This document shows, piece by piece, positions 20,002 to 64,000 of a DNA stretch of 64,000 bases. A program made the translations under genes and the position numbers. Source of the DNA: Octopus sinensis (Eukaryota); the NCBI RefSeq assembly GCF_006345805.1, contig NC_043004.1:89466001-89530000 (forward strand), given 5' to 3'. A model generated the notes under the pieces. The model ran no database searches. It had not been told where the DNA came from and was given only the letters and a program-made list of their open reading frames with translations. Each line of letters starts with the position of its first letter. Within the stretch, counting starts at the first letter, position 1.

Positions 20002-22007
20002 ATAATATCAAAATACATACAGATTATTAAGTTGTATTTCAAGAGGCTTATTTGCCAATTATAAACACAAGATACAACAGTATCTGTTGCAAACACACGA
20101 GTTTACATCAAGAATCTTGCAAACCAAATACAGAAACGAAACATATAGATAAATGTTAAACAGAAAACCAGAGAAATAAAGATCTTTGGAGTATAAGAGT
20201 TGTTTCGCCACAGGCAAGGCCTGATCACGAATGTTTATAATCAAAAGTATTCCAACCCATAGCCATCTTGTCATTTTGAATATCACAAACTATATTTATT
20301 TCTTTATTGCCTACAGAGGGCTAAACATAGAGGGGACAAACAAGGACAGACAAAGGGATTAAGTTGATTACATCGATCCCAATGCGTAACTGGAACTTAT
20401 TTAATCGACCCCGAAAGGATGAAAGGCAAAGTTGACCTTGGTGGAATTTGAACTTAGAACGTAATGGCAGACAAAATATCACTAATCATTTCGCCCAGTG
20501 TGCTAACGATTCTGCTAGCTTGCCACCTTTCATGAACTAAATTGTCTCTATATATCCATCCTTTCCTTTAAAAACTGTAGAGTTTAATTTGAGGGCGACT
20601 CAGCTGCTACCTTCATGCCTGGCTCTCTCTGTTGGTTATGACAAGTGTTCCTGTCAATACAATCAACCGAACAGCCTGTGCGTGAAATTAACGTGCAAGT
20701 GGCTGAGCACTCCACAGACATGTGCACCCTCTTAGGGAGATTCAGTACGACACAGAATGCAACAAGGCTGGCTCTTTGAATTACAGGTACAACTCATTTT
20801 TGCCAGCTGAAGAGACTGAAGCAACGTGAAATAAAGTGTCTTGCTCAAGAACACAGTGCGCCAGTAGGAATCGAACTCACAACCTTACAGTTATGAGCTG
20901 AATACCCTAACCACTAAGCCATATGTCTACACTGCTGCCTTCAACAGATTAAGTGACTGCATAAAGGATCCCTTCTGAACTAGGGTCGTTAGGCTCTGTC
21001 TGTCTGTCTGTCTCTATCTGTTAGAGACAAGTGAGCACTTATGACTGATGAGGATGTTTCTGATCAAGCGGCCAGTTCACCGTGTGCAGTCTATAATAAG
21101 TGTATTTGATCATAAGGGTTACATGAGAAACTTCCAGAAGGCTTTCCCAGTACTATTTGCAATAACTCACTGAAGTGCTTTTAGTAATACAGTTGGCCAG
21201 CAGGTGGTAGATAAATATAACAGCATCAGCATAAAGTAGAAGACAATCAAATAATGATTATGTTCCATTAATGTCAGAAAATTTTATCTTAATGGCTAAA
21301 TCAAATGAAGGAGGGTCACATCATCATCATCATCGTTTAACGTCCGTTTTCCGTGCTAGCACGGGTTGGACGGTTGAACCGGGATCTGGGAAGCCAGGAG
21401 GCTGCACCAGGCTCCAGTCTGATCTGGCAGTGTTTCTGCAGCTGGATGTCCTTCCTAACGCCAACCACTCCGTGAGTGTAGTGGGTGCTTTTTACATGCC
21501 ACCGGCACATATATGACCTTATTTCACAGGAGCTCTGAGGCCGAGAGAACATAGTTAAACTTGGACTGGGAATCTGGCTTCTATGTTGTAATTGTGTAGA
21601 CTCTGCTAAAGGCACTTAAGGGCCAGGTGGTCATGGCAAACCAGATAATTGATTAGGTTTACTGATGGAAGGTGCAAAGTGACATGGCAAAAGTTAGCAG
21701 AGATTCGTTGAGCAGTGGTATATTTATGATTCTACTTATGTACTTGATGATTTCCCTAGCTGCTGGTGCCATGTACAAAGCACCCAGTACACTTTGTGAA
21801 ATCATTGGTGTTAGGAAAGGCATCCAAATGTAGAAAACAAACCAAAGCAGACATTGGAACTTGATGTAGACTTCTGGTTTGTCAGTTTCTGTCAAACTGT
21901 CCAAACCAAGACTGGAATTTTTCAAGGAGGTGCCCCAACATGGCCACAATATAATGACTGAAACACTCAACAGATAAAAGATAACAAACAAGTGACTGCA
22001 GTATTAC

Positions 22008-25519: not shown

Positions 25520-25810
25520 ACCGCAGCACATCTGCAAAGGTCTCGGTCGCTAGTCATTGCCTCGGTAAGTCCCAATGTTCAAAGGTCATGCTTTACCACC
25601 TCATCCCAGGTTTTCCTGGGTCTACCTCTTCCACAGGTTCTCTCAACTGCTAGGGTGTGACACTTTTTTCACACAGCTATTCTCATTCATTTGCAACACA
25701 TGACCATACCAGCACAGTCGTCTCTCTAGCACACCACATTTGATGCTTCTTAAATCCAACTTTTCTCTCAGGGTGCTTATACTCGGTCACATATGCACAC
25801 TAACATTACA
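25520..25810 (-). mobile_element. RTE-type LINE 3' fragment
   Basis: Nucleotide homologue of the 9225 and 35866 fragments (ctggtatggtcatgtg...ggtagacccaggaaaacctgggatgaggtgg). Confidence 0.7.
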
Positions 25811-26330
25811 GCTTGCTTACCAACCACATGGTTCTAGGTTCAGTCCCACTGTGTGGAACTTTGGGCAAGTGTCTTCTACTATAGCCTCGGGCCGACTAAA
25901 GCCTTGTGAGTGGATTTGGTAGACGGAAACTGAAAGAAGCCCGTCGTATATATATATATATATATACAGACACACACACACACATATATATGTATGTATT
26001 TGTGTGTCTGTGTTTGTCTACCCACCATTGCTTGACAACCGACGTTGGTGTATTTATGTCCCTGTAACTTAGTGGTTTGACAAAAGAGACCGATAGAATA
26101 AGGACTAGGCTTACAAAGAATAAGTTCTGGGGGTTGATTTGTTCGACTGCAGGCAGTGTTCCAGCATGGCATGGCCACAGTCAAATGACTGAAACAAATC
26201 ATCATCATCATCATTTAGTATCCGCTTTCCATGCTAGCATGGGTTGGACGGTTCAACTGGGGTCTGGGAGGCCAGAAGGCTGCACCAGGCCCAGTCTGAT
26301 CTGGCTGTTTCTAAATAAAAGAATAAAAGA

Positions 26331-27899: not shown

Positions 27900-29400
27900 T
27901 TTCTTTCTTGATGCTTCTGGTGGCACAAGTAAAACATTTGTAACATTACTTCACTCCAAGGTAATGTAACAAAAAAGAATTGAAGTTGCTATACCATTGT
28001 CTGGCTTTGCTGCCACCATTCTCCCTAGGAGGACGAACAGCTCATTCTGCTTTTAAATTACTACTAAACCTGGTCACAAATGACAGTCCAATTTGTAACA
28101 TAAGCAAAGATCCAGGTTCACCAGAAGTGTTGTGTCAATGTCACCTTATCATTTGGGATGAATGCACCATGTCACATAAGGGTGCAATGGAAGCTCTTGG
28201 TAAGACCTTACAGGACACCAGAGGCAACAATAAATCTATAGAAGTTACATTAATTTTACCAGGAGACTTCAGACAGACATTACCAGTCATTCCGAGACAA
28301 ACAAGATCTGAGGAAATAAAAGCATGCATTAGGTCTTCACACCTATGGAATAAAGTACTGAAATCCTCATTCAATACTAATGTGCGACCTTTATTACATG
28401 GGGACCAATGTGCAAAACAGTTTTCAACCTGGCTCCTCCAATTAGGAAATGGAAAAGTACCATTTGATGGGAATGGTGATATCAGTTTGGCTCATATTGC
28501 TACCATGGTGAATTCCCCAGCTGAATTGAAGAACAGTGTTTTTCCAGACTTAAGTAATAATTATAATTCACATAAATGGTCGTGTGAAAGGGCAATTCTT
28601 GGTCCAAAAAACGAGACAGTAGCAAGGATTAACTATGAATTAATGAATAAGATTCCAACAGTCATTAAGAAGTACAAATCAGTTGATTCAGTCCTTCATG
28701 AAAATCAAGCTGTCCATTATCCAACAGAGTTCCTTAATTCTCTTGAACCACCTGGAATTCCTCCACATAAACTTTTTCTGAAGGTAGGAGTCCCAATAAT
28801 GCTTCTAAGAAATTCAGATCCTCCTAAATTATGCGAAGGGACAAGGTTGATTGTGAAGACATTACTACCTAATGTAACAGAAGCTAACATCATCAATGGA
28901 TGAGCCTCTAGGGAAGAGGTTTTCATTCCAAGAATTCCAATCAAACCAATAGACATGCCATTTGAGTGCAAATGAACACAATTCCAGGTGAGACTTTGCT
29001 TTTCAATGTCTATTAATAAAGCTCATGGTCAGTCTTTGAAATCTACTGGGCACCTTTAAGTTGGTTGCTCCAGGGAAGGTAGTTTGCAAGACTTATTTTG
29101 TCTATGCTCCAAACCAGAAAACAATAAAATGTTGTTTACCCAGAAGCTCTTACGTAATTTCCTTCAGCATAGAATTTATCTCCTTTCATAAAAGTGGTAA
29201 ATTTTGTATTTTGATTTATTATTATTATTAATTTGTATTATGAATTCAAAATTCATTTCCCAAAAAAAGAATAAATTGAATCCCAATTGAAGAATAAATT
29301 GAATTTAGAATAACAAATTTCTATACAACGTATTTTGCTTTTTTTTTCCAATATATATGGAAAAATTTAATTCCCAGGTAATGCTGAGTGCCTCTATTTA
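27900..29400 (+). mobile_element. Helitron PIF1-like helicase fragment, decayed, in RCHY1 intron 4
   Basis: FFLDASGGTSKT (mutated Walker A), GGRTAHSAFKL, LIIWDECTM, GDFRQTLPV, PIMLLRN...LCEGTRL, FSMSINKAHGQSL, with stops and frameshifts. Confidence 0.9.
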
Positions 29401-30261: not shown

Positions 30262-31969
30262 TTTATATCTGAGAGTGAAGAAGTGTTATTTCCGTTGGTC
30301 TACTGGACCGCCTGTGGTTTTATAAGAACTTTGGCCGTCCATTTCGATATCACTGAGTGTGTGTTGTGCGTAGGTTGGCCTGGCAAATGTCATTTGGGGT
30401 CACACTTTCTATGATCATTCTGTGGAGGTGTGTGTGTGTGTGTGTGTGTGTTTTTGTGTGCGTGCGTGTGTGTGTATGTGTGTGTGTGTCTGTGTGTTTG
30501 GAGAAGGGGAGAGACAAAAAGAGAAAAGGGAAAATTAAAAAAATAATAATAAAAATAAAAAAATATAGAAATATAAAAATAAAAAATAAAATATAAAAAA
30601 ATAAAAAATAAAAAATATAAAGAATAAATAAAAATATAAAAAAAAAAAAAAATAAAAATAAAAATAAGGGAGGAAGTGGAGAAGAAAAAATATTTTTGTG
30701 TGTTGATATTTATACCAACACATATATATACACACACACAGACTTATACATAAAATATTTGAAAAAACCTTTTTATTGGTTCAAAATGAACAACCAAATT
30801 ATACCATCTTGAAAATTGTATATCATAGGAAAGTTAAAATTAAAGTGACAATTAAAAGGTAAAGATGGAAGTGAATTATAAAGATAATAATATAATATGA
30901 TGTATATAACAGGCAATACACACATCTACACACACACAGATTTGTCCTTCAATGTATGTTGAGTAAAGTTTCAGCCATTTAATTTGGGGGAGAACTTAGC
31001 TATGAAACGTTTTTCCATATTCCTCCTGAAGGGGGTGTCGTTCTTTGGACACTTGTAGAAGGGAAATATCTTAAATTTTCCTTCTCCACATGTAGCTAGG
31101 TGTGTGCTTAGTGGTATTTTGCGTAGTTCTTCCTGCCGAATATGTTGTCGGTGGATCCTGGCTCGCTGGCACAAAGAATTACCAGTTTCACCTACGTAAT
31201 TCTCCTTGCACGTGGGGCAGGTTATGCAGTATATGACGTTCTGCGTCTTGCAGTTCATATCTGCATTTACTTTGAATATGACACCATTTTTAAATCTTAT
31301 CTCTCTGTTGCTCTCTATGTATTTGTAGGTGGGGTTGCTGCAGGTCCCACATCTACCATCTCCGCACTCTTTTGCAAAGAATTCCGTTTTAGTTTCTGAA
31401 GAGAATTTCGCTCTTGTTAGGTGTTTTTTTTAGGTTTTTGTCCTGATGTCTACTGTTTTTTATGCTATATTTGTTTAATATGTTTTTCATTTTGGGGCTC
31501 TGTAAGGCTATTGTAGGTTTGAATGTATGGTTTGAAGATGTTGGTAACTCCAGGGTTGTGTGTGTTTATAAAAGGGATAGTGTTTTCTTTGTTTTTTGTT
31601 TTGGGTGTCCTGAGTTGTGTGATGTCTAGTTTTAATGCTCTTGTGATTCCATTTTCTATTAGTTTAAGGGGGTATTTTTGCTCTAGGAGGAAGCTTTGAG
31701 TTCATCTAGTCTTATTAATCGTATTTGTGAATCAGTTACTATGCTACATATTCGTCGTGCCATACTATATGGGATGTTTCTTTTTGTGTGGGATGGGTGG
31801 CAGGAGTGAAAATTTAAGTATTGATGTGTGTCAGTTTTTTTGTAGTGGATGTCTGTTGTGACGATGGAGTTGTGTATTTTGATGTTGATGTCTAGGAAGG
31901 GAAGTTCGTTGTGGCTGGTATCTATTGTGAAATTGATAGATGGGTGCAGCGTATTGAGGATGTTGTGGA

Positions 31970-32007
<38 letters not shown>

Positions 32008-35000: not shown

Positions 35001-35372
35001 TTTACATTTGACGGATATTTTTCCTCATCTTATTTGTTGTTAACACAAATCAGATGTCTTGGGGAAATTTCGAACCTGGATTCTCATTCCTAAGGTATTT
35101 TTGTTGTTGTTGTTATTGTTATTATTATTCAGGTCACTGCCTGGAATCAAACTTGGAATCTTGGGGTTAGTAGCCAGCACTCTTAACCACTACACCATAT
35201 GCCCGTAACCTGAACAACAACAACAATAGCAACAACAACATCGAAAAATACCTTAGGAATGAGAACCCAGGTTCGAAATTTCCTCCAAGACACCTGATGA
35301 AGGCTGGAGGGTATATCAGCCGAAACGTGTTAACAACAAACAAGATGAGGACAAATATCTGTCAAATGTAAA
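35001..35372. mobile_element. Palindromic non-autonomous element with a tRNA-like centre and a hammerhead-like motif in one arm
   Basis: Inverted arms at 35001-35134 and 35207-35372. Centre 35131-35204 (minus) has A-box TGGTGTAGTGG and B-box-like AGTTTGATTCC. CTGATGA-a-GGCTG..CAGCC-GAAA at 35294-35325. Confidence 0.75.
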
Positions 35373-43815: not shown

Positions 43816-44209
43816 GCGCAGGAGTGGCTGTGTGTTAAGTAGCTTGCTTACCAACCACATGGTTCCAGGTTCAGTCCTACTGCGTGGCATCTTGGGCAAG
43901 TGTCTTCTACTATAGCCTCGGGCTGACCAAAGCCTTGTGAGTGGATTTGGTAGATGGAAACTGAAGGAAGCCCGTCGTATATATGTATATATATGTGTGT
44001 TTGTTTGTGTGTCTGTGTTTGTCCCCACCAACATTGCTTGACAACCGATGGCGGTGTGTTTACATCCCCGTAACTTAGCGGTTTGGCAAAAGAGACCGAT
44101 AGAATAAGTACTAGGCTTACAAAGAATAAGGGTTGATTTCCTCGACTAAAGGCGGTGCTCCAGCATGGCCGCAATCAAATGACTGAAACAAATAATAGAG
44201 TAAAAGAGT
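43816..44209 (+). mobile_element. Full-length tRNA-derived SINE, the most abundant family in the window
   Basis: Head ggagtggctgtgtg..aagtagcttgcttaccaaccacatggttccaggttcagtcc, internal (TA/TG)n and tail aaatgactgaaaca..aaaagagta. Other copies at about 5075-5440, 7120-7450, 12080-12500, 13680-14060, 25810-26200, 34340-34680 and 47494-47879. Confidence 0.88.
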
Positions 44210-46725: not shown

Positions 46726-47879
46726 GATTAGTGATCCTTCTTGATTATCCGAATTTTTTTTTTTTTTTCTTTTTGTATAAAATGGTTTGTACACATTTGT
46801 TTATACATCGATTACAATTTTCTTTTAAAAACAAATGAAATTATAACAGAAAACTAACCAAAAGCAATAGGTTGTGAAGGGAGATGACTCCATTTCGATG
46901 AGCAAAAAGCAAAAAATAATTAATTAATGGGTCAAAGGAAAAACATTCAAAATTTTAGCTGAAACGATTGGGCAATAAATAGTCTTACGACCATCCTATG
47001 TCAAAACAACGCCCAAGTTTTCAATGCAAACTTGGCGGAATTGTACTGTACGCACGGAATATAGTCCCTCGTAACTTCTTTATTTTTTGGAATTTTCAGA
47101 AAATTTTTGAGAATTTGTGTTCTACACATGGAAAATTCACACGACTACGAGAGAGAAAAAAAAATTTTAAGTTTTCGGAATTTTTTTTTTAATCTTTGGA
47201 ATTTTTTTTTTTTAACGCGGTTTAAAATACGGACAGTCCGGACTTTTTGCTTAAATCTCAGCAATATACCATTAGATGTATTAATGGGGAGAAACATATT
47301 GAAAAGCATCAATTGTCTCAATTGTCAGACAAACAAACGAGGACGATATAGGGTAGTCGTAAGTTGTGCTAAAAATAACAGCTAAATACCCCCTTAAATC
47401 ACAAGTTTTTTTCCCCCCTGCATAGTCGTATGAATTCTCGTGTGTTGAACACAAATTCACAAAAAAGTTTCTGAAAAGTTAAAAAAAATAAAAGGTGGCT
47501 ATGTGGTAAGTTGCTTGCTTACGAGCCACATGGTTCCGAGTTCAGTCCCACTGCGTGACACCTTGGGCAAGAGCCTTCTACTATAGCCTCGGGCCGACCA
47601 AAGCCTTGTGAGGAGATTTGGTAGACGGAAACTGAAAGAAGCCCGTCGTATATATGTATGTGTGTGTATATGTTTGTGAGTCTGTGTTTGTTCCCCCAAC
47701 ATCGCTTGACAACCGATGCTGATGTGTTTACGTTCCCGTAACTTAGCGGTTCGATAAAAGGAGCCCGATAGAATAAGTACTATGCTTACAATGAATAAGT
47801 CCTGGGGTCGATTTGCTCGACTAAAGGCGGTGCTCCAGCATGGCCGCAGTCAAATGACTGAAACAAGTAAAAGAGTATA

Positions 47880-51419: not shown

Positions 51420-51473
51420 CACTAAAGAACAATCTCGCTTGTAGTGTGAACAGTCAAGTGCAACGCTAGCCAT
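51420..51473 (-). CDS. RCHY1: RCHY1 first coding exon: MASVALDCSHYKRDCSLV
   Basis: caagATGG (A at -3, G at +4) ... GTG|GTaagt. Contains the C-x-HY-x-R-x-C motif. The eight exons sum to 54+120+119+79+104+30+145+72 = 723 nt = 240 aa plus stop. Confidence 0.94.
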
Positions 51474-52344
51474 CTTGACAATAACAGACCATGGAGAAAA
51501 AACACCTGATAATAAAAGTTGAGATTTATATTTAAAGAAAAAAAAAACTAATCAATTAAAAAAAATTTTTGAGGTATGAATTTAACTATAAATGATTAAT
51601 AATTCTTGTTTAAAAAGAAGTATTCTATTTTTAAATATTTATTTATTTGCAAAGTGAAAAAAAAATTTGTCCGTATCACAAAACCATATGATGTCATTTC
51701 CTGTCCATCCTTTTTTTTTTTTAATCTTTTACGCTTGTCGTGAATCTCTTTTGTAATTGTTGAATTACTCGGTTGTTGAACTCACGATCATAAAGGCATG
51801 GATGCGATTCTTAGTTTAGGTCATGCGTCGTGTCCTTAAGCAAGAACGAAAATAAGTACCGACAGCAGCTGGAAGATAAACTTGCGATCAGCGGGCGACA
51901 CATCCAGCAAGAAGTCGTCTGTATACCTCGGGACCATTCGAGATACGCTCTAGCCGAATCTTCCTGTGTATGACTATGAAGATGGATACAGAGACATAGA
52001 GATTACTTGAAGGTGACTGTAAATCAGAAAGTAATCCCTGTGTGGGGTAGCACGAAATGGTCATAAAGTGGGGGTTGACAGAACCTTGCTGGATCGTCTA
52101 AGACAATGTAACAGATTGTTGAAAAATCATGACTGACAATTTCCCTAGATGCCTCCCAAAGATCGATTATGTAAAAAAGACTGTGCTGAGAAGTTTGCTT
52201 CTCAGCCACATTGTTCCGAGTTCAGTCGTACTGTGTGACACCTTTAGTGTTTTCTTGCTATAATCTTCGTTCCGACCAAAGCTTTGCGAGTAGATTTGGT
52301 CGATGGAAACTGAAAGAAACCCGCCTTATGTATGTATATATTTT

Positions 52345-53520
52345 CCGGAAAGTAGAGTATTATGTATCCGTCACGGTTGATCTTACCAATCGGTTTCGCG
52401 CAAGGAATACAATGGAGTGTTAGGTAACAATACGATTATATAACCTTACGCTCATCAGAGTTAACCGATATGGAAAGGAATATGACGACTGTTCTCTATT
52501 GTGGGGAGTGGATTAACACAACCGATTAGCGACTGGTGTGAAAAGGGTGATGAAATGAAAAAGGGCCAGGGGATTGGGTTAAAAGTTATGTCCCTTGGTT
52601 GGGTATTCTGTGAGGCCGGTAAGAGTTATCTTGAAGTGTTTGTGGGAGAAAGTGTGTATTATTAAGTGTGGTGTTCCTGTGGTGATGGGGTGTGTGATAT
52701 ATGTAATGGTGTCATATGCATCATTTTTCAGGCTGTGTAGGTATATATAGTTATGTTCATTGGTCTGTTTTCTTTCTGTAAAGGATAAGCTCGCGTGTGG
52801 GGGCGCTTTATGTTAGTGTGCTGTGTGTAATCTGTGTGGGGGGTACAATGTGTATGGAGGGGTATATGTTGGGGATGGTAGAAGACAGCTTATTTTGTGG
52901 GGTGTCCACCTTATAGGGGTGTGCGTGTGTGTAAATGGGTGCATTGGTATATGCTTTGGTCAAACCCTTTGCCCGACCCGAGGGCATTGGTGGAAGGCCG
53001 AGACCGGGGACTTGTGGTTGCAGTCATGGTAGGGTGCGGGGGTACAATAGGTCGTATTTCCTTTCATGTGGGTAAGGATTAAACACCTTACTCCTGGTAT
53101 TTATGTAAACATCCGGGAGTTGGGTGCCCTTTAAAATTGCTCTCTTCTCAGCCAGGCATAACCTGCATTCTCTACTGCTTTTGAAGTATGGTTTGCATTT
53201 CTCCAGGATCTTCTACTTTATGCTGTACCCTGTGGAGTTTTCTTTCAAAGACCAAACGTGCTTAGCTAGCGTAGTAGCATTATGTTTCTCTGGGATATCG
53301 AAGGAAGATTTCTGGTTGTTAAGGCGGGTTCTGAAGGAGCCTTCCGTTGCCCTACATACTTCTATATGCTCGGTTGTTCTTTGGGTCCTATGGCTGTTAC
53401 CTCTGCCTCGTATACAACTGCCTCCGTGTTACAGTGACTGTTCAACGGACGAGTTGTGTTACCCATGCATGAGCAGCCTGCTTCTGCCTCTGTCTCAAGT
53501 TTAGGCCTACCTACTGAAAT
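52345..53520 (-). mobile_element. 3' fragment of a Penelope-like retroelement (GIY-YIG endonuclease plus 3' UTR with hammerhead), decayed
   Basis: Translation across TAG stops and a frameshift: CSC...PLNSHC..VVYEAEV...KYVG..TEGSFRTRLNNQKSSF...TTLAKHVWSLK...CRLCLAEK...INTRS (about 53030-53510). Ends are approximate. Confidence 0.8.
52374..52467 (-). ncRNA. Type I hammerhead ribozyme, apparently intact
   Basis: Minus strand: CGGUU-AA-CU CUGAUGA GCGUAAGG [loop] CCUUGCGC GAAA CC-GAUU-GG UA^ AG-AUC-AACCG. The core is fully canonical, stem II has 8 bp, stem III is closed and the triplet is GUA. Predicted cut between 52384 and 52383. Confidence 0.85.
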
Positions 53521-56500
53521 CTTTTTTACACTAGATGCACAGCTAAAAGATAATCTCAGGGTATGTCTATTAGATATTTTGCTGAATCTATTAGTATGGG
53601 AGAAGTGTCAATCAACTATACCAAAGAAGAACTGACCTACTCTGGTTTTAGAGTTTAAAGAGAAGGGCGGCATGAACCACAGCACCTTCTGGTGGTACTT
53701 TCTCTCGGGGGGTGGGGGCTATTATCCTTGACTTGAAACTGCTGGCACACATATTCGCGCGCGTCTGTGTGTGTAAAAACTAACATTTCCTTTTCCAAGC
53801 TGAGATTCGAAACAACTGCTTCGAGTTGGCAAAGTAAAAATTAACAATAGGAGAAATATTGTGTCAACGTGATAAGGTAGAACCGGGCATGTTTTGTGTC
53901 TGTGTGTGCGTTGGTCATTCGGTTGTGTCTGTTTATGTTCTGCGACTACTACTGCATTGTGTCGTTCATGCCAAATATGTGGTTCTCTGTTGGCTGCTTG
54001 ACTGGCGCAAGCTGGCTGCTGTCTTTCGACCGTTTGCCTGTTACTGGCTGTCTGTCCATCTGTCGTGTGCCCGACAGTATTTATAATCTAGAAGAATAGA
54101 CATACCATAGGAGCAATTTCTACCTATGTAGGTTGCTTTCTGTCCACTTGAACCTTCAATGACACAGCTCAGATTGGAGGTCGAATGGAAATCCATCCAT
54201 CACTTTTGACAGGACAAAGAAATTTCTTTCGTGTCTGCTCGGCCGGTGGTGGATCAGGTGAGCGAGAATCCTTAGATTCGGTTTCGAATCTCAGCTTGGA
54301 AAAAGAAATGTTAGTTTAATATATTCTGTTGTGTCTCCCCAGACACAACAGAATATACTTCAACACACGAACACATATAAAGAATCTTGCAAACCAAATC
54401 CAAAAACGAAAATTAAAACACAAGTTTCACAATTTGCAAAGTAAATACAGCGATGTCACTTGACATACTACCTCGAGAAGGTCACTGCTATCGCTCAATG
54501 CGCACGCAACCGTGTGCAGCCATCTGTTGATGCCTTACAAAACTAGTCCAGAAACCTTTTGATACAGCCTTGTATATATAATGCGGAAGGCCAGTTTATG
54601 CGATTACCTTAGGTTTCCCATCCATAAAAGGTTTAACTTTATGGTGTATCATCAGATCCCAAAAGCCTGTTGGCCCATGACCTCTCTGATAGGAAGCATG
54701 TTTTGTGTCTATACCAGCTCTACACCCGGAGGAGCAGGTTCATGCCATCAAACAACATCATTGAGTATTATATATACGAACCGGTTAAATTGCTTAGGGT
54801 TTGGTTTGGTCTAGCTCTGCAGCGGAGAAGAAACAGGGTAAAGTGACGAGCAGGATGACTACATCCACCCAGAAATGTGCTGAGGAGGCCAACTCCGAAA
54901 AGTTGGACAGAGATAGCGAACACCTACATTGTCTCCTTCATCAGTTACCACTTGACAATCGTGCATTGCCCCAATTCACGTCCGACCAGACTGGAGTATC
55001 TACTCTACTGAGTGAAAAGGACAAATTCCACTGATCAGGCGCTCCATTTGCTTTCAATACCTGCTGCATGTTGCACTGGGCATGCTGTGGCTGATGATCC
55101 ACAGGCATGTACTGAGGTTGTAACATTTCCAGCATTTTCTTGATTAGGAAAGTTGTGGTTGCCATTTTTGTCAGACTCTTTAGAGTTGCTGCCTTGAATA
55201 AAAAACCGATGCAAGGTGTTTGGCATCATGAATTTCGTGAAGCTCTCACAACTCTCCACAAGTAAAGCAATACGGTAGATAGAAGCTTTACATTAGCGTT
55301 CTGTAATGGATTCGTGGAGGGCAAAAGCAAGAACATTCTCGGCGAAACTCTGGGCGTTGATGAAAATCAGCAAGCTGATCTGTTCCGAAAGACGTCAAGC
55401 CGATCCCATGAATAATGTCTAGGAATCTCTCGACATTGCTATCAGGGGGTGGTATTGCTGCTTCGAAATAAGCTCTACAGACAAGAAAGTGTTGTTTTGG
55501 GGGCCTGTCTGAGATGTGCGCAGGGCAACAAAACTGTTGTGCTAGCACTCGTCAGAAGCTGATCATTACTGATTTGCAGAGTTATGTTGAATAGCCGCTT
55601 TTAAATGTAAGGCTGATCCACAGGCTAGGGAACAGGGGGTGCAAGCGCACTCCCTAAAACTTTGCAGGTGGGGGCAATGAAAGCCCTTTGAACATCCTCC
55701 TGAAAAACTGGGTTTGCATCCCCTATGCAAATTTCGTTCCTGCACTTATGGATGGATCAGACTGTCGACAGAGTTGATTATTGTAGCTCGTCCTGCCGTC
55801 TTACTTTGGCGAGTAATGCAGGTAGCTTTTATCGGTATTTTAACCTTAGGGGAAAAGGTGTGGTGAATAAGACTGAAAGGGCTTAAAGATAGATACCTTC
55901 CTCTTTGTTCAAGTCCTTGTCAACTTTTTCAAGTTTCACTTAGAAAAGAAAATTAGGGTAGAGAGAGTAGTGCTGTCGCTCATTTAATTTCTTGAATGTA
56001 TGCGAGTGAGAAGCATGGTATGAATAAATGGGACTCTTCCGAGCATATGCTTGTAGATTAGAGACACAGCAGGGAGAGGGTGCTTGCCTTAGTGGTCAAG
56101 GTGACTTGTTTTTGAGAAGTTTCCATACAAGTAGTCATTGAAGATGTCTCTGCTTTGGGGAAAATTTTCTTTGTTTTGTTATTTCTCGTTTACTCATTTT
56201 TCATGTAACCCCACACTATCACCTCGTACCATCCTCAATTTTTTTGTCAACCTTTTGTGATTAATAAAGAATATTATTACTATAATTTTGCCGCCGAGAC
56301 CACTTTGCTTTCATCCTTTCGAGATCCGTACAGCAAATATCCACTGAGCACTAAGGTCGATATGTGATTGACTAACCCCCTATCCCACAAAATTTCAGAC
56401 CTTGTACCTATCGAAAAAATCAACTGCATTCACACCTGAAGAAAGATGTGCTCACAAAGTTTAAAATGTCCAACACGATATGAGTCAATGGAGACGCCCT

Positions 56501-62828: not shown

Positions 62829-64000
62829 TATTTGTGGTAAAAAGTTCTCCACAGATGAAAATTTATCTACCCACAAACATATTCACACAGAGATGAAACC
62901 ATATTGCCATGATATTTGTGGGGAGGCACTCTCTGAAGAAAATGGTTTATCTAACCACAAATGTATCCACACAGAAGAAAAACCATACCGTTGTGATATT
63001 TGTGGTAAAAAGTTCCTGAGAAATACTGGTTTGTTGAACCATATACGAATTCACACAGGAGAGAAACCATACGTCTGCAGCATTTGTGAGAAAGCATTTT
63101 CTCAACATAGTAACTTGATGAACCATAGCAGAATTCACACAGGTGAGAAACCACATCGTTGTGATATTTGTGGTAAATCATTCTCTCAAAACAGCAATCT
63201 GTTGGTTCATCGCCGTATTCACACAGGAGAAAAACCATACCACTGTGATATATGTGGTAAAGCATTTTCCCAGAATGGTAATTTATTAATCCATAGAAGT
63301 ACTCATGGAGGAGAGAAGCAATATCATTGTGATATATGTGGTAAAGGATTCTTTGTTAATTCTTCTTTAACTAGACACATACGAGTTCACACAGGTGAAA
63401 AGCCATACTGCTGTGATATCTGTGGGAAAACATTCACTGCTTCGAGTTCATTATCAATGCATAAACTTAACCATACAGGTAATAAGCCATACCACTGTGA
63501 CATTTGTGATAAAGCTTTCCTTAACAATAACACTTTGTTGAAGCACAGAAGAAGTCATACAGGTGAGAAACCATATCACTGTGATATCTGTGGCAAAGCA
63601 TTCTCTCAAAACAGCAATTTATTAACGCATACACGCATTCACACAGGTGAAAAGCCATATCATTGTGATATTTGTGACAAAACATTCTCGCAAAATATTA
63701 ATTTGATAATTCATAGGTCTGCTCACAGAGGAGAGAAACTCTATCCTTGTGATATTTGTGGTAATGCTTTCTCCAGTATTTCTTCTTTATCAACTCACAG
63801 ACGTATTCATACAGGAGAAAGACCACACTGCTGTGATATTTGCGGCAAAGCATTCACTGCTTCCAGTTCATTGTCAATGCATAAGCTTACACACACAGGT
63901 GAGAAGCCATACTACTGTGAAATCTGTGGTAAAAATTTCCCAAAAACTAGCATTTTGTTGAATCACAGACGAATTCACACAGGTGAGAAACCATACCAGT
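62821..64000 (+). CDS. Tandem C2H2 zinc-finger protein, 3'-incomplete: 2 degenerate plus 12 intact fingers with TGEKPY-type linkers
   Basis: The frame is open from 62785 to the window end. First ATG is at 62821 (MTDICGKKF...). Repeating Y-x-C-D-I-C-G-K-x-F...H-x3-H-TGEKP units. It is absent from the ORF track, presumably because it runs off the end. The true start is uncertain. Confidence 0.9.

What the first reader, a model, noticed from the sequence alone, without database searches (positions are those of the whole stretch)
52374..52467. Intact hammerhead ribozyme 0.9 kb upstream of, and sense to, the RCHY1 start codon
All conserved core nucleotides are present (CUGAUGA, GAAA, GUA). Stem II has 8 bp with a long loop. 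Stem III (ACC-GAUU-GGU) is also self-complementary for dimer formation. Stem I has an internal loop (CGGUU-AA-CU / AG-AUC-AACCG), the geometry that supports tertiary contacts in natural type I hammerheads. It remains perfect while the adjacent endonuclease ORF has stops and a frameshift. Any transcript running toward RCHY1 would be cut at 52384/52383, so it could truncate a 5' leader or intron, or insulate the promoter from read-through. Origin from a Penelope 3' end is established biology; a host function is inference.
Basis: partly seen in the sequence, partly recalled or inferred. Interest (0 to 1): 0.75.

Follow-up and report, generated by a model that had tools for sequence, protein, structure and literature searches.

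The report
Retrotransposon hammerhead relic upstream of RCHY1
A genuine hammerhead-ribozyme motif, left by a dead Penelope-like retrotransposon, lies 0.9 kb upstream of the octopus RCHY1 gene and has stayed unchanged between Octopus species, but nothing yet shows that it cuts RNA there or serves the gene.

Summary
The motif is real. On the minus strand, 52467-52374 carries a complete type I hammerhead: CUGAUGA, GAAA, a GUA cleavage triplet, an 8-bp helix II with a 38-nt loop, a 3-bp helix III and an interrupted 7-bp helix I. It lies 911 nt upstream of the RCHY1 ATG and in the same sense. The window is Octopus sinensis.

The motif is the 3'-terminal hammerhead of a 5'-truncated, decayed Penelope-like element (PLE) of the Hydra clade. 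Paralogous copies show that the endonuclease remnant, the 3' UTR and the hammerhead form one element. Full-length relatives carry type I hammerheads just after the same ORF.

The insertion predates the O. sinensis/O. bimaculoides split. Core, helix II with its loop, and helix III are 75/75 identical between these species, against 84% in the rest of the element (p about 0.001).

The pattern does not fit a working self-cleaver. The loop is frozen. Helix I has lost two pairs in O. bimaculoides. A hairpin that hides CUGAUGA outcompetes the hammerhead fold. Helix III is the weak, near-palindromic kind that works in dimers. One studied PLE hammerhead needed the element's protein in order to cleave.

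The origin is settled. A host function stays unproven and is not excluded.

The parts
52374..52467 (-). Type I hammerhead motif: helix I 5' strand, CUGAUGA, helix II domain, GAAA, helix III, GUA cleavage triplet, helix I 3' strand
   Evidence: Orthologues in O. vulgaris and O. bimaculoides. Paralogues L005 and L008.
52452..52458 (-). Catalytic box CUGAUGA (C3-A9)
   Evidence: Invariant in all five aligned sequences.
52398..52451 (-). Helix II domain: an 8-bp stem enclosing a 38-nt 'loop' that can itself fold into a further 7-bp + 4-bp hairpin. The loop is homologous in paralogue L008.
52384..52397 (-). GAAA, helix III (ACC/GGU, loop GAUU) and A17. The predicted cleavage is between 52384 and 52383.
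   Evidence: 10-bp self-duplex. Paralogue L008 has loop GAUC, which in the window's CC/GG context would make the 10-mer a perfect palindrome.
52383..52465 (-). 83-nt stretch identical in O. sinensis and O. bimaculoides. It is the longest perfect run in the 1.5 kb upstream of RCHY1 apart from exon 1.
52453..52470 (-). Competing hairpin UAUCGG-UUAACU-CUGAUG, which sequesters the catalytic box
   Evidence: 100% paired in 4 sequences.
52468..53023 (-). 3' UTR of the Penelope-like element, between the endonuclease stop and the hammerhead. It is C/A-rich.
   Evidence: Paralogues L005/L006 align continuously from 53622 to 52715, and L007 to 52826. An inverted copy in L005 aligns to 52580-52450.
53024..53706 (-). 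Decayed C-terminal part of a Hydra-clade PLE ORF: post-RT region, CxCX5C-type linker and a GIY-YIG endonuclease without CCHH. Lesions: stops at 53610-53608, 53364-53362 and 53215-53213, and a frameshift near 53347. The copy is 5'-truncated, with no RT upstream.
52345..52373 (-). 3' tail of the element, running into a (TA/CATA)n stretch. Homology to paralogue L008 reaches 52349.
52182..52341 (+). SINE copy abutting the element's 3' end (context, not part of the element). It is shared with O. bimaculoides.
51420..51505 (-). RCHY1 ATG-bearing exon. The conserved acceptor ...UUAUCAG|G is at 51506/51505, the ATG at 51473, and the donor GUG|GUAAGU at 51420/51419.

Best explanation
This is the 3'-terminal hammerhead of a dead, 5'-truncated Penelope-like retrotransposon of the Hydra clade. 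The element spans about 53706-52345 on the minus strand: endonuclease remnant, 3' UTR, hammerhead and tail. It inserted upstream of RCHY1 before O. sinensis/O. vulgaris and O. bimaculoides diverged.

In a live element this motif sits in the terminal repeat. It is thought to process long or tandem element transcripts. Two copies pair through the near-palindromic helix III to form a dimeric ribozyme that cuts after GUA, and in one studied PLE the element's own protein was required.

At this locus one copy remains, with no tandem partner in the 64-kb window and no intact ORF in the copy itself. Its monomer fold is predicted to lose to a hairpin that hides CUGAUGA. I therefore expect it to cleave poorly or not at all.

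The hammerhead block does evolve more slowly than its flanks, so something appears to be retained. The pattern (frozen loop, free helix I) points away from self-cleavage as the selected property.

Shown: the motif, its homology, its element of origin, its age relative to the species split, and its conservation. Inferred: low activity, and the nature of the constraint.
For: Motif and coordinates.

Element identity: a search of protein representatives with 53607-53365(-) gave 76 hits. The full-length relatives P0071, P0057, P0082 and P0050 have an RT YRDDG motif and a CxCX5C linker (P0071 also has DKT). Their GIY-YIG domain lacks CCHH, and CxxC and CxH flank the conserved E and N. These are the features that define the Hydra clade in PMC8557442. 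The relatives align to window 53706-52958 with E values of 1e-17 to 1e-30.

One element: paralogous contigs L005/L006 align continuously from 53622 to 52715 at 74.6%. They also carry an adjacent inverted 3' end reading ...UAUAUUGGCUAACU-CUGAUGAGCAU. L008 carries an inverted copy of 52459-52349 at 78% identity, with CUGAUGA, the homologous 38-nt loop, GAAAC and GGUAAGAUCA.

Relatives: L016 and L017 have type I hammerheads 293 nt and about 100 nt after the ORF stop.

Age: orthologues exist in O. vulgaris (L004) and O. bimaculoides (L001).

Low activity: the hammerhead-compatible fraction is 0.0015 (O. sinensis), 0.0002 (O. vulgaris) and 5e-9 (O. bimaculoides). The competing hairpin appears in the MFE structures of O. 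vulgaris and O. bimaculoides and in the O. sinensis dimer fold. O. bimaculoides has two derived pair-breaking changes in helix I. The dimer forms a 10-bp helix III. Literature: PLE hammerheads probably act as dimers and show low self-cleavage in vitro (PMC4209133). The Anolis PLE hammerhead showed no cleavage without protein and left no RNA-seq ends at the cut site (PMC11167929). No second copy of this hammerhead lies in the window.
Against: Conservation argues against a purely neutral relic. There are 0 changes in 75 nt (core + helix II + helix III), where the local rate of about 15% predicts about 11. Six of 7 CpGs are kept, against 53% in aligned non-coding DNA. The perfect run starts and ends almost exactly at the catalytic part of the motif.

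Nearest-neighbour folding ignores tertiary contacts, co-transcriptional folding and proteins, so 'poor cleaver' is a prediction, not a measurement.

Helix I is intact in O. sinensis and keeps pairing through a G-U in O. vulgaris.

Perfect non-coding runs of 72-85 nt occur about five more times in the 22.5 kb aligned. Local rate heterogeneity is therefore real, and its cause is unknown.
Confidence: 0.6

Rival explanations
1. Domesticated ribozyme. The hammerhead is kept because it cleaves sense transcripts that run through it, such as upstream or read-through transcripts or a 5' intron of RCHY1. In this way it would insulate or shape RCHY1 5' ends, as proposed for the conserved intronic hammerheads of amniotes.
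For: The block is significantly more conserved than the rest of the element, and its borders match the catalytic part. It lies in sense to RCHY1, 911 nt from the ATG. In O. bimaculoides the predicted isoforms X1/X2 start at L001 10001 and splice to the acceptor 33 nt before the ATG, so the motif lies in that intron. Helix I is intact in O. sinensis and O. vulgaris. Precedent: RECK, CTCL and DTNB intronic hammerheads (PMC6155905).
Against: Helix I is needed for cis-cleavage, yet it evolves at or above the neutral rate (4 changes in 19 nt) and has lost 2 of 7 pairs in O. bimaculoides. The 38-nt loop, which catalysis should not constrain, is frozen. The predicted fold fraction is tiny. Helix III is only 3 bp. 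There are no compensatory changes. The motif is absent from the Argonauta locus. The upstream exon of O. bimaculoides X1 is not found in O. sinensis. There are no transcript data.
Confidence: 0.17
2. Exapted non-ribozyme element. The conserved 83 nt would be kept as DNA or as an RNA hairpin derived from the element's terminal repeat. One example is a core promoter and first mini-exon for RCHY1: a TATA-like TATATAA at 52442-52436, then a 5'-splice-site-like UUG|GUAAGA at 52386/52385 joined to the conserved acceptor at 51506.
For: This would explain three things: a frozen loop, conservation that stops just after GGUAA, and neutral change downstream in the helix I 3' strand, which would then be intron. 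The acceptor at 51506 is conserved and used in O. bimaculoides gene models. PLE terminal repeats are reported to hold the TSS, an internal promoter and a 5'-UTR intron in Penelope and Chlamys-3 (PMC8557442).
Against: There is no TSS, CAGE or RNA-seq evidence. TATA-like strings are common in this AT-rich DNA. The GUAAG follows partly from hammerhead constraints (G16.2, U16.1, A17). Hydra-type relatives L016 and L017 have no GU at that place. The match of the block's borders with the catalytic core would be a coincidence.
Confidence: 0.15
3. Neutral relic with chance conservation. The block is unconstrained and simply escaped mutation in two lineages, through a local cold spot or chance.
For: Only one informative species pair exists. 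Other perfect non-coding runs of 72-85 nt occur in the same 22.5-kb alignment. Paralogue L008 shows ordinary decay, with CpG loss breaking helix II.
Against: At 85% local identity, 75 unchanged positions have a probability of about 5e-6. Six of 7 CpGs are retained, against 53% background.
Confidence: 0.07
4. Chance motif: not a hammerhead relative at all.
For: Rfam gives no hit. Across a whole gigabase-scale genome, the shuffle rates would give some chance matches.
Against: There are homologous copies with the same boxes in paralogues, and the motif is linked to a PLE endonuclease. Relatives of the ORF carry hammerheads. Rfam also misses those.
Confidence: 0.01

Closest known systems
Hammerheads of Penelope-like elements, in particular the Hydra clade (Cervera & de la Pena 2014, PMC4209133; Craig et al. 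2021, PMC8557442)
   Same: Type I topology. The motif lies in the 3'/terminal-repeat region after a GIY-YIG ORF. Helix II is long (8 bp) and helix I short and poorly defined. Helix III is very short with a near-palindromic loop, suited to dimers. Copies occur mostly as solitary 5'-truncated fragments or as inverted pairs. The 3' end runs into a (TA)n-like stretch.
   Different: Helix II carries a 38-nt loop, giving a 54-nt domain. The two Hydra-type relatives read here have 9-nt loops. The motif lies about 570 nt after the stop, against about 100-300 nt in those relatives. Craig et al. list Mollusca among the Hydra hosts and name cephalopods only for Naiads. My literature search found no description of hammerheads in octopus.
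Conserved intronic hammerheads of amniotes (RECK, CTCL, DTNB; de la Pena & Garcia-Robles 2010, cited in PMC6155905)
   Same: A retroelement-type type I hammerhead, in sense within or next to a host gene and unchanged at an orthologous locus.
   Different: The amniote motifs are conserved across classes. Here conservation is seen only within the genus Octopus and not in Argonauta. Helix I is broken in one species. The intronic position rests only on a predicted isoform of one species.
Protein-assisted hammerhead of the Anolis Poseidon element PAc (PMC11167929)
   Same: A PLE hammerhead that is silent as naked RNA. This is the behaviour I predict here.
   Different: PAc belongs to a different clade (Penelope/Poseidon). 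Its motif overlaps the ORF start, and the element is active. Here the ORF is dead.
Animal non-LTR retrozymes (PMC7229834; bioRxiv 10.64898/2026.07.22.740005)
   Same: Type I hammerheads related to PLE terminal repeats.
   Different: Retrozymes are tandem repeats of a few hundred nt that yield circular RNAs. Here there is one copy and no tandem unit.

Membership tests
Hammerhead ribozyme, type I | Conserved core: C3 U4 G5 A6 N7 G8 A9, G12 A13 A14, A15.1-U16.1 pair, H17 not G | tested here: met
   CUGAUGA, GAAA, A-U closing helix III, and A17.
Hammerhead ribozyme, type I | Three helices around the core, with helix I open and helices II and III closed | tested here: met
   Helix II 8 bp, helix III 3 bp, helix I 2+5 bp with an AA/AUC internal loop. 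92.5% of cells are paired over 5 sequences.
Hammerhead ribozyme, type I | The active fold is accessible to the RNA | tested here: inconclusive
   The best hammerhead-compatible structure is -21.1 kcal/mol against an MFE of -24.4. The fraction is 0.0015 in O. sinensis and 5e-9 in O. bimaculoides. The energy model ignores tertiary contacts and proteins.
Hammerhead ribozyme, type I | Covariation supporting the helices | tested here: inconclusive
   No pair changes on both sides. There are only 3 orthologues and 2 partial paralogues.
Hammerhead ribozyme, type I | Match to Rfam hammerhead covariance models | tested here: not met
   No hit at the gathering score or at E<=10. The test is uninformative, because the clear hammerheads of L016 and L017 are also missed at E<=1.
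Hammerhead ribozyme, type I | Site-specific Mg2+-dependent self-cleavage giving 2',3'-cyclic phosphate and 5'-OH ends | not testable with these tools
   This needs in vitro transcription or end-specific RNA sequencing.
Penelope-like element, Hydra clade | [quoted passage not shown] | tested here: met
   The window reads VVYEAEV..KYVGQ/TEGSFRTRLNNQKSSF..CRLCLAEK..N..(Y)PH. Relatives have CxxC...CRH or CPH. Pfam GIY-YIG scores just under its cut-off for relative P0050 (21.7 against 22.6 bits). The remnant itself has no Pfam hit.
Penelope-like element, Hydra clade | Linker CxCX5C upstream of the endonuclease | tested here: met
   P0071 has CNCRVKSEC, P0082 has CNCRIKQNC, and paralogue P0035 has CPCRGNTTC. 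The window has CSCMGNTTR, with the third Cys lost.
Penelope-like element, Hydra clade | PLE reverse transcriptase (with DKT in place of DKG) fused upstream of the endonuclease | tested here: inconclusive
   This copy is 5'-truncated and has no RT. The full-length relatives that align to it have YRDDG and the FLDV...KPN...SNHP thumb, and P0071 has DKT. No RT phylogeny was made.
Penelope-like element, Hydra clade | Canonical hammerhead in the terminal repeat or 3' region | tested here: met
   Window 52467-52374; paralogues L005 and L008; relatives L016 and L017.
Penelope-like element, Hydra clade | PLE insertion structure: 5' truncation, and partial tandem or adjacent inverted copies | tested here: met
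   The window copy is 5'-truncated. L005, L006 and L008 have an inverted 3' end next to a direct copy. L017 and L016 show tandem or terminal-repeat structure.
Penelope-like element, Hydra clade | Insertion into (TA)n | tested here: inconclusive
   The 3' end abuts AUAUAUACAUACAUA, which may equally be the tail of the neighbouring SINE.
Domesticated intronic hammerhead (amniote type) | Sense position inside an intron of a host gene | tested here: inconclusive
   It lies inside the 5' intron of the predicted isoforms X1/X2 of O. bimaculoides. The upstream exon is not found in O. sinensis. No transcript data are available.
Domesticated intronic hammerhead (amniote type) | Conservation of the whole ribozyme, including helix pairing, over long evolutionary distance | tested here: not met
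   Core, helix II and helix III are identical in three Octopus species. Helix I loses 2 pairs in O. bimaculoides, and nothing comparable is present at the Argonauta locus.
Non-LTR retrozyme | Tandem repeats of a hammerhead-bearing unit | tested here: not met
   A single copy. There is no repeat of 52342-52940 in the window.

The most novel reading that the evidence does not exclude
A piece of a Penelope-like element's terminal repeat has been co-opted in the genus Octopus. Either the hammerhead itself, held in check by the hairpin that masks its core, cuts sense transcripts upstream of or within the 5' intron of RCHY1. Or the same 83 nt serve as a repeat-derived promoter, first exon and splice donor for RCHY1. 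Either case would be an invertebrate example of a retroelement hammerhead block kept under purifying selection at a host gene.
Probability: 0.3. Interest if true: 0.7.

Novelty: new member of a known kind. Interest (0 to 1): 0.4.

Why it matters
Hammerheads in Penelope-like elements are known and very numerous, so a single relic near a gene is not surprising. Two things are worth keeping.

First, this documents a Hydra-clade PLE family in Octopus whose hammerhead has a 54-nt helix II domain.

Second, this copy is unchanged over 75-83 nt between species whose surrounding DNA differs by about 15%. If that constraint is real, the locus offers a clean natural experiment. O. sinensis has an intact helix I. 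O. bimaculoides has a broken helix I and a strengthened masking hairpin. Comparing them would show whether retroelement hammerheads are ever retained for catalysis in invertebrate host genes, or only for the DNA or RNA around them.

Tried and rejected
- Rfam, at the gathering score over the whole window and at E<=10 over 51800-53000, gave no hammerhead. I rejected this as evidence after the control on relatives.
- Pfam and NCBIfam on the stitched ORF remnant gave nothing.
- The word-indexed protein search with the remnant and with paralogue P0035 found no relatives. The exhaustive HMMER search was needed.
- O. bimaculoides isoform X3 was not on record. The longest isoform was.
- A self-BLAST found no other copy of the hammerhead-bearing sequence in the window.
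- Two metagenome pattern scans for family hammerheads found nothing.
- Argonauta: the upstream region does not align, and no hammerhead lies near the RCHY1 5' end.
- Covariation counts were uninformative with 5 sequences.
- Naiad-type PLE with an N-terminal endonuclease: rejected. Relatives have the RT upstream of the endonuclease and no CCHH, and Naiads lack canonical hammerheads.
- Pre-miRNA reading of the helix II hairpin: considered and set aside. It has only about 20 bp, and the possible lower stem is not conserved in O. bimaculoides.
- Retrozyme: rejected, because there is no tandem unit.
Full report
OBSERVATION

Read on the minus strand, 52467-52374 is CGGUUAACU / CUGAUGA / GCGUAAGG - 38 nt - CCUUGCGC / GAAA / CC-GAUU-GG / UA^ / AGAUCAACCG (coordinates checked). 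This is a complete type I hammerhead. It has both conserved boxes and the A15.1-U16.1 pair, with A at position 17. Helix II has 8 bp and helix III 3 bp. Helix I has 2+5 bp split by an AA/AUC internal loop.

My descriptor scan found no other complete motif on either strand of the window. In 300 dinucleotide-preserving shuffles of the window, the expected count per 64 kb was 0.09 for the loosest definition and 0.003 for one close to the real motif. That alone would not exclude chance across a whole gigabase-scale genome, but the homology evidence below does. Rfam gives no hammerhead hit at the gathering score or at E<=10. It also fails on two clear PLE hammerheads in relatives, so this negative carries no weight.

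CONTEXT

The window is Octopus sinensis chromosome CM016866.1, 100% identical over 6.2 kb to locus L003. RCHY1 lies on the minus strand. The ATG-bearing exon is MASVALDCSHYKRDCSLV with the ATG at 51473. The best database match is O. bimaculoides RCHY1, and the O. sinensis protein matches the window's exon translations at every position where O. bimaculoides differs. The predicted cleavage site is therefore 911 nt upstream of the ATG, in sense. A SINE with at least 12 relatives in the window abuts the 3' side at 52341-52182.

WHICH ELEMENT IT COMES FROM

Upstream on the same strand, 53706-53024 reads as a decayed ORF..VLWFMPPFS..CSC..VVYEAEV..KYVGQ/TEGSFRTRLNNQKSSF..CRLCLAEK.. It has three stops and one frameshift. 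Pfam, NCBIfam and the word-indexed protein search did not recognise it.

An exhaustive HMMER search with an 81-residue stop-free piece gave 76 hits. The full-length relatives are P0071, P0057, P0082 and P0050. They have an RT YRDDG motif, the FLDV..KPN..SNHP thumb and a CxCX5C linker, and P0071 also has DKT. Their GIY-YIG domain lacks CCHH, and CxxC and CxH flank the conserved E and N. This is the published description of the Hydra clade of C-terminal-endonuclease PLEs, in which canonical hammerheads are universal (PMC8557442). The relatives align to the window with E values of 1e-17 to 1e-30. There is no RT upstream, so the copy is 5'-truncated.

THE ENDONUCLEASE REMNANT AND THE HAMMERHEAD BELONG TOGETHER

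Paralogous octopus-type copies on short public contigs settle this.
- L005 and L006 align without a break from 53622 to 52715 at 74.6% identity. Next to that they carry an inverted copy of 52580-52450 ending in ..UAUAUUGGCUAACU-CUGAUGAGCAU at the contig edge.
- L008 carries an inverted copy of 52459-52349 at 78% identity. It has CUGAUGA, a homologous 38-nt loop, GAAAC and GGUAAGAUCA.
- Two Hydra-type relatives from other organisms have type I hammerheads, CUGAUGA-U-UGCC/UGGG...GAAA-CU-NNN-AGUA^. They lie 293 nt after the ORF stop (L016) and about 100 nt after the stop of an upstream tandem copy (L017).

The long helix II domain is thus a feature of the octopus family, not a later insertion. 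In L008, CpG decay (GCG to GCA, GCGC to ACAC) has broken helix II. That is what a neutral copy looks like. L008 also has GAUC in loop 3. The ancestral ACCGAUCGGU was therefore probably a perfect palindrome, the hallmark of dimer-dependent hammerheads (PMC4209133).

AGE AND CONSERVATION

The motif is present at the orthologous place in O. vulgaris. The only change within it is AACCG to AACUG, which turns one helix I pair into G-U. It is also present in O. bimaculoides.

In O. bimaculoides the alignment with O. sinensis starts at 52937. The endonuclease part is missing there, and the interval holds a mariner-like remnant. Because paralogues span that boundary, the simplest reading is one ancestral insertion followed by loss of its 5' part in O. 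bimaculoides. Argonauta has no alignable upstream region and no hammerhead near the gene's 5' end.

Between O. sinensis and O. bimaculoides:
- The hammerhead is 90/94 identical, against 393/470 for the rest of the element 5' of it (Fisher p=0.0011).
- Core + helix II + helix III are 75/75 identical.
- Six of 7 CpGs are kept, against 53% in aligned non-coding DNA.
- The 83-nt perfect run 52465-52383 is the longest in the 1.5 kb upstream apart from exon 1. It ranks joint sixth in 22.5 kb of alignment, where exons and about five other non-coding blocks reach similar lengths.

The block looks constrained.

WHY I DO NOT CONCLUDE THAT IT IS A WORKING RIBOZYME

1. All four differences between the two species fall in helix I. 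By comparison with the paralogues, the two that break pairs (C-G to C.A and G-C to A.C) are derived in O. bimaculoides. Meanwhile the 38-nt loop, which catalysis should not constrain, is frozen.

2. The hammerhead-compatible structure is 3.3 kcal/mol worse than the MFE in O. sinensis. It accounts for 0.15% of the ensemble there, 0.02% in O. vulgaris and 5e-9 in O. bimaculoides. A 5' hairpin, YAUYRG-UUAACU-CUGAUG, hides the catalytic box. It is pairable in all four sequences that cover it. The two 5' changes in O. bimaculoides make it perfectly Watson-Crick. These are transitions opposite G or U, however, so they would keep pairing in any case.

3. Helix III has only 3 bp. Two copies form a 10-bp intermolecular helix III at -12.4 kcal/mol, but the window holds no second copy of this hammerhead.

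4. Published work reports low in vitro activity for PLE hammerheads (PMC4209133). For the Anolis element it reports no cleavage without the element's protein and no RNA-seq ends at the cut site (PMC11167929). Here the ORF is dead.

5. The helix I internal loop lies 2 bp from the core and helix II runs 8 bp before any irregularity. A review describes PLE hammerheads as usually lacking the characteristic tertiary interactions (PMC6155905). This reading of the geometry rests on general knowledge, not on a test.

6. No pair changes on both sides among the five available sequences.

WHAT COULD EXPLAIN THE CONSTRAINT

(a) Weak or regulated cleavage of sense transcripts. In favour: predicted isoforms X1 and X2 of O. 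bimaculoides start 4.2 kb upstream and splice to a conserved acceptor 33 nt before the ATG, which puts the motif in a 5' intron. Against: that upstream exon is not found in O. sinensis.

(b) A non-catalytic role for the terminal-repeat fragment. The block contains a TATA-like TATATAA (52442-52436). It also contains a splice-donor-like UUG|GUAAGA at the cleavage site, and conservation stops right after it. PLE terminal repeats are reported to hold a TSS, a promoter and a 5'-UTR intron (PMC8557442). Against: Hydra-type relatives lack a GU at that place, and I have no transcript data.

(c) Chance or a mutational cold spot.

I cannot separate these with the tools at hand.

VERDICT

The origin is settled and refined to a Hydra-clade PLE, 5'-truncated, inserted before the split of the Octopus species compared. 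The claim that any transcript would be cut is not supported, and I expect poor or no cleavage. A host function remains open, with real but ambiguous conservation in its favour.

Hammerheads of Penelope-like elements are an established and very abundant class, so this is a new member of a known kind. The conserved block, and the natural helix I variant in O. bimaculoides, make it a reasonable candidate for a bench test.

Noticed in passing
window 30974-31970 (-): A second, unrelated PLE 3' fragment of the canonical type lies inside an RCHY1 intron. It has the RT thumb (LPFLDI..YKKTDT..HP), a CX2-5CxxC-like linker and a GIY-YIG domain with CCHH (NVIYCITCPTCKENYVGET..). No hammerhead was found downstream of it.
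   Followed up: partly
window about 35282-35345 (+), core C3 at 35294: A minimal hammerhead-like motif, GACAC-CUGAUGA-A-GGCUG..CAGCC-GAAAC-GUGUU, lies antisense to RCHY1 next to exon 3. It is also present in O. vulgaris (L004 -28093) and O. bimaculoides (L001 -23998, with an inverted partner at +24252). This is the inverted-pair arrangement described for PLE remnants.
   Followed up: partly
window 52453-52470 (-): The hairpin UAUCGG-UUAACU-CUGAUG masks the catalytic box. It is pairable in O. sinensis, O. vulgaris, O. bimaculoides and paralogue L005. The two O. bimaculoides substitutions convert its G-U pairs to Watson-Crick pairs while breaking helix I.
   Followed up: partly
window 52436-52442 and 52381-52388 (-); acceptor at 51506: Inside the conserved block there is a TATA-like TATATAA, and a splice-donor-like UUG|GUAAGA at the hammerhead cleavage site. 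A conserved acceptor lies 33 nt before the RCHY1 ATG and is used by predicted O. bimaculoides isoforms.
   Followed up: no
window 52182-52341 (+) and at least 12 other places (e.g. 43831-43992, 47502-47659, 25810-25961): An abundant SINE of about 160 bp. One copy, with its (TATG/TA)n tail, abuts the 3' end of the PLE fragment and is shared with O. bimaculoides.
   Followed up: partly
L001 10904-12790 (O. bimaculoides): A mariner-like transposase remnant (..SDYHLFPNMKKHLTGNQYHSDDDVISAVDEFF..) occupies the interval where O. sinensis and O. vulgaris have the PLE endonuclease remnant.
   Followed up: partly
L001 10001-10170 (O. bimaculoides): The upstream coding exon of predicted RCHY1 isoforms X1/X2 (METHQLRPTAF...) has no detectable counterpart in the O. 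sinensis window. It may be species-specific or a prediction artefact.
   Followed up: partly
window 20862-20923 (-): Rfam tRNA match of 32.1 bits (gathering score 29), covering model positions 6-65. It lies in an RCHY1 intron and may be a tRNA-derived repeat head.
   Followed up: no
L002 about 28443-28500 (+) (Argonauta): A hammerhead-like motif, CUGACGA-GUUCCC..GGGAGC-GAAAC, lies downstream of Argonauta RCHY1. It is unrelated in sequence to the Octopus one.
   Followed up: no
window about 62900-63700 (+): C2H2 zinc-finger repeats ([10 protein letters not shown]...) from a divergently oriented neighbour gene. The intergenic distance to RCHY1 is about twice that in O. bimaculoides.
   Followed up: no
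L016 2677-2718, L017 183-224: Rfam release 15 does not report these clear type I hammerheads of Hydra-type PLEs even at E<=1. Rfam-based scans will therefore under-count PLE hammerheads.
   Followed up: yes
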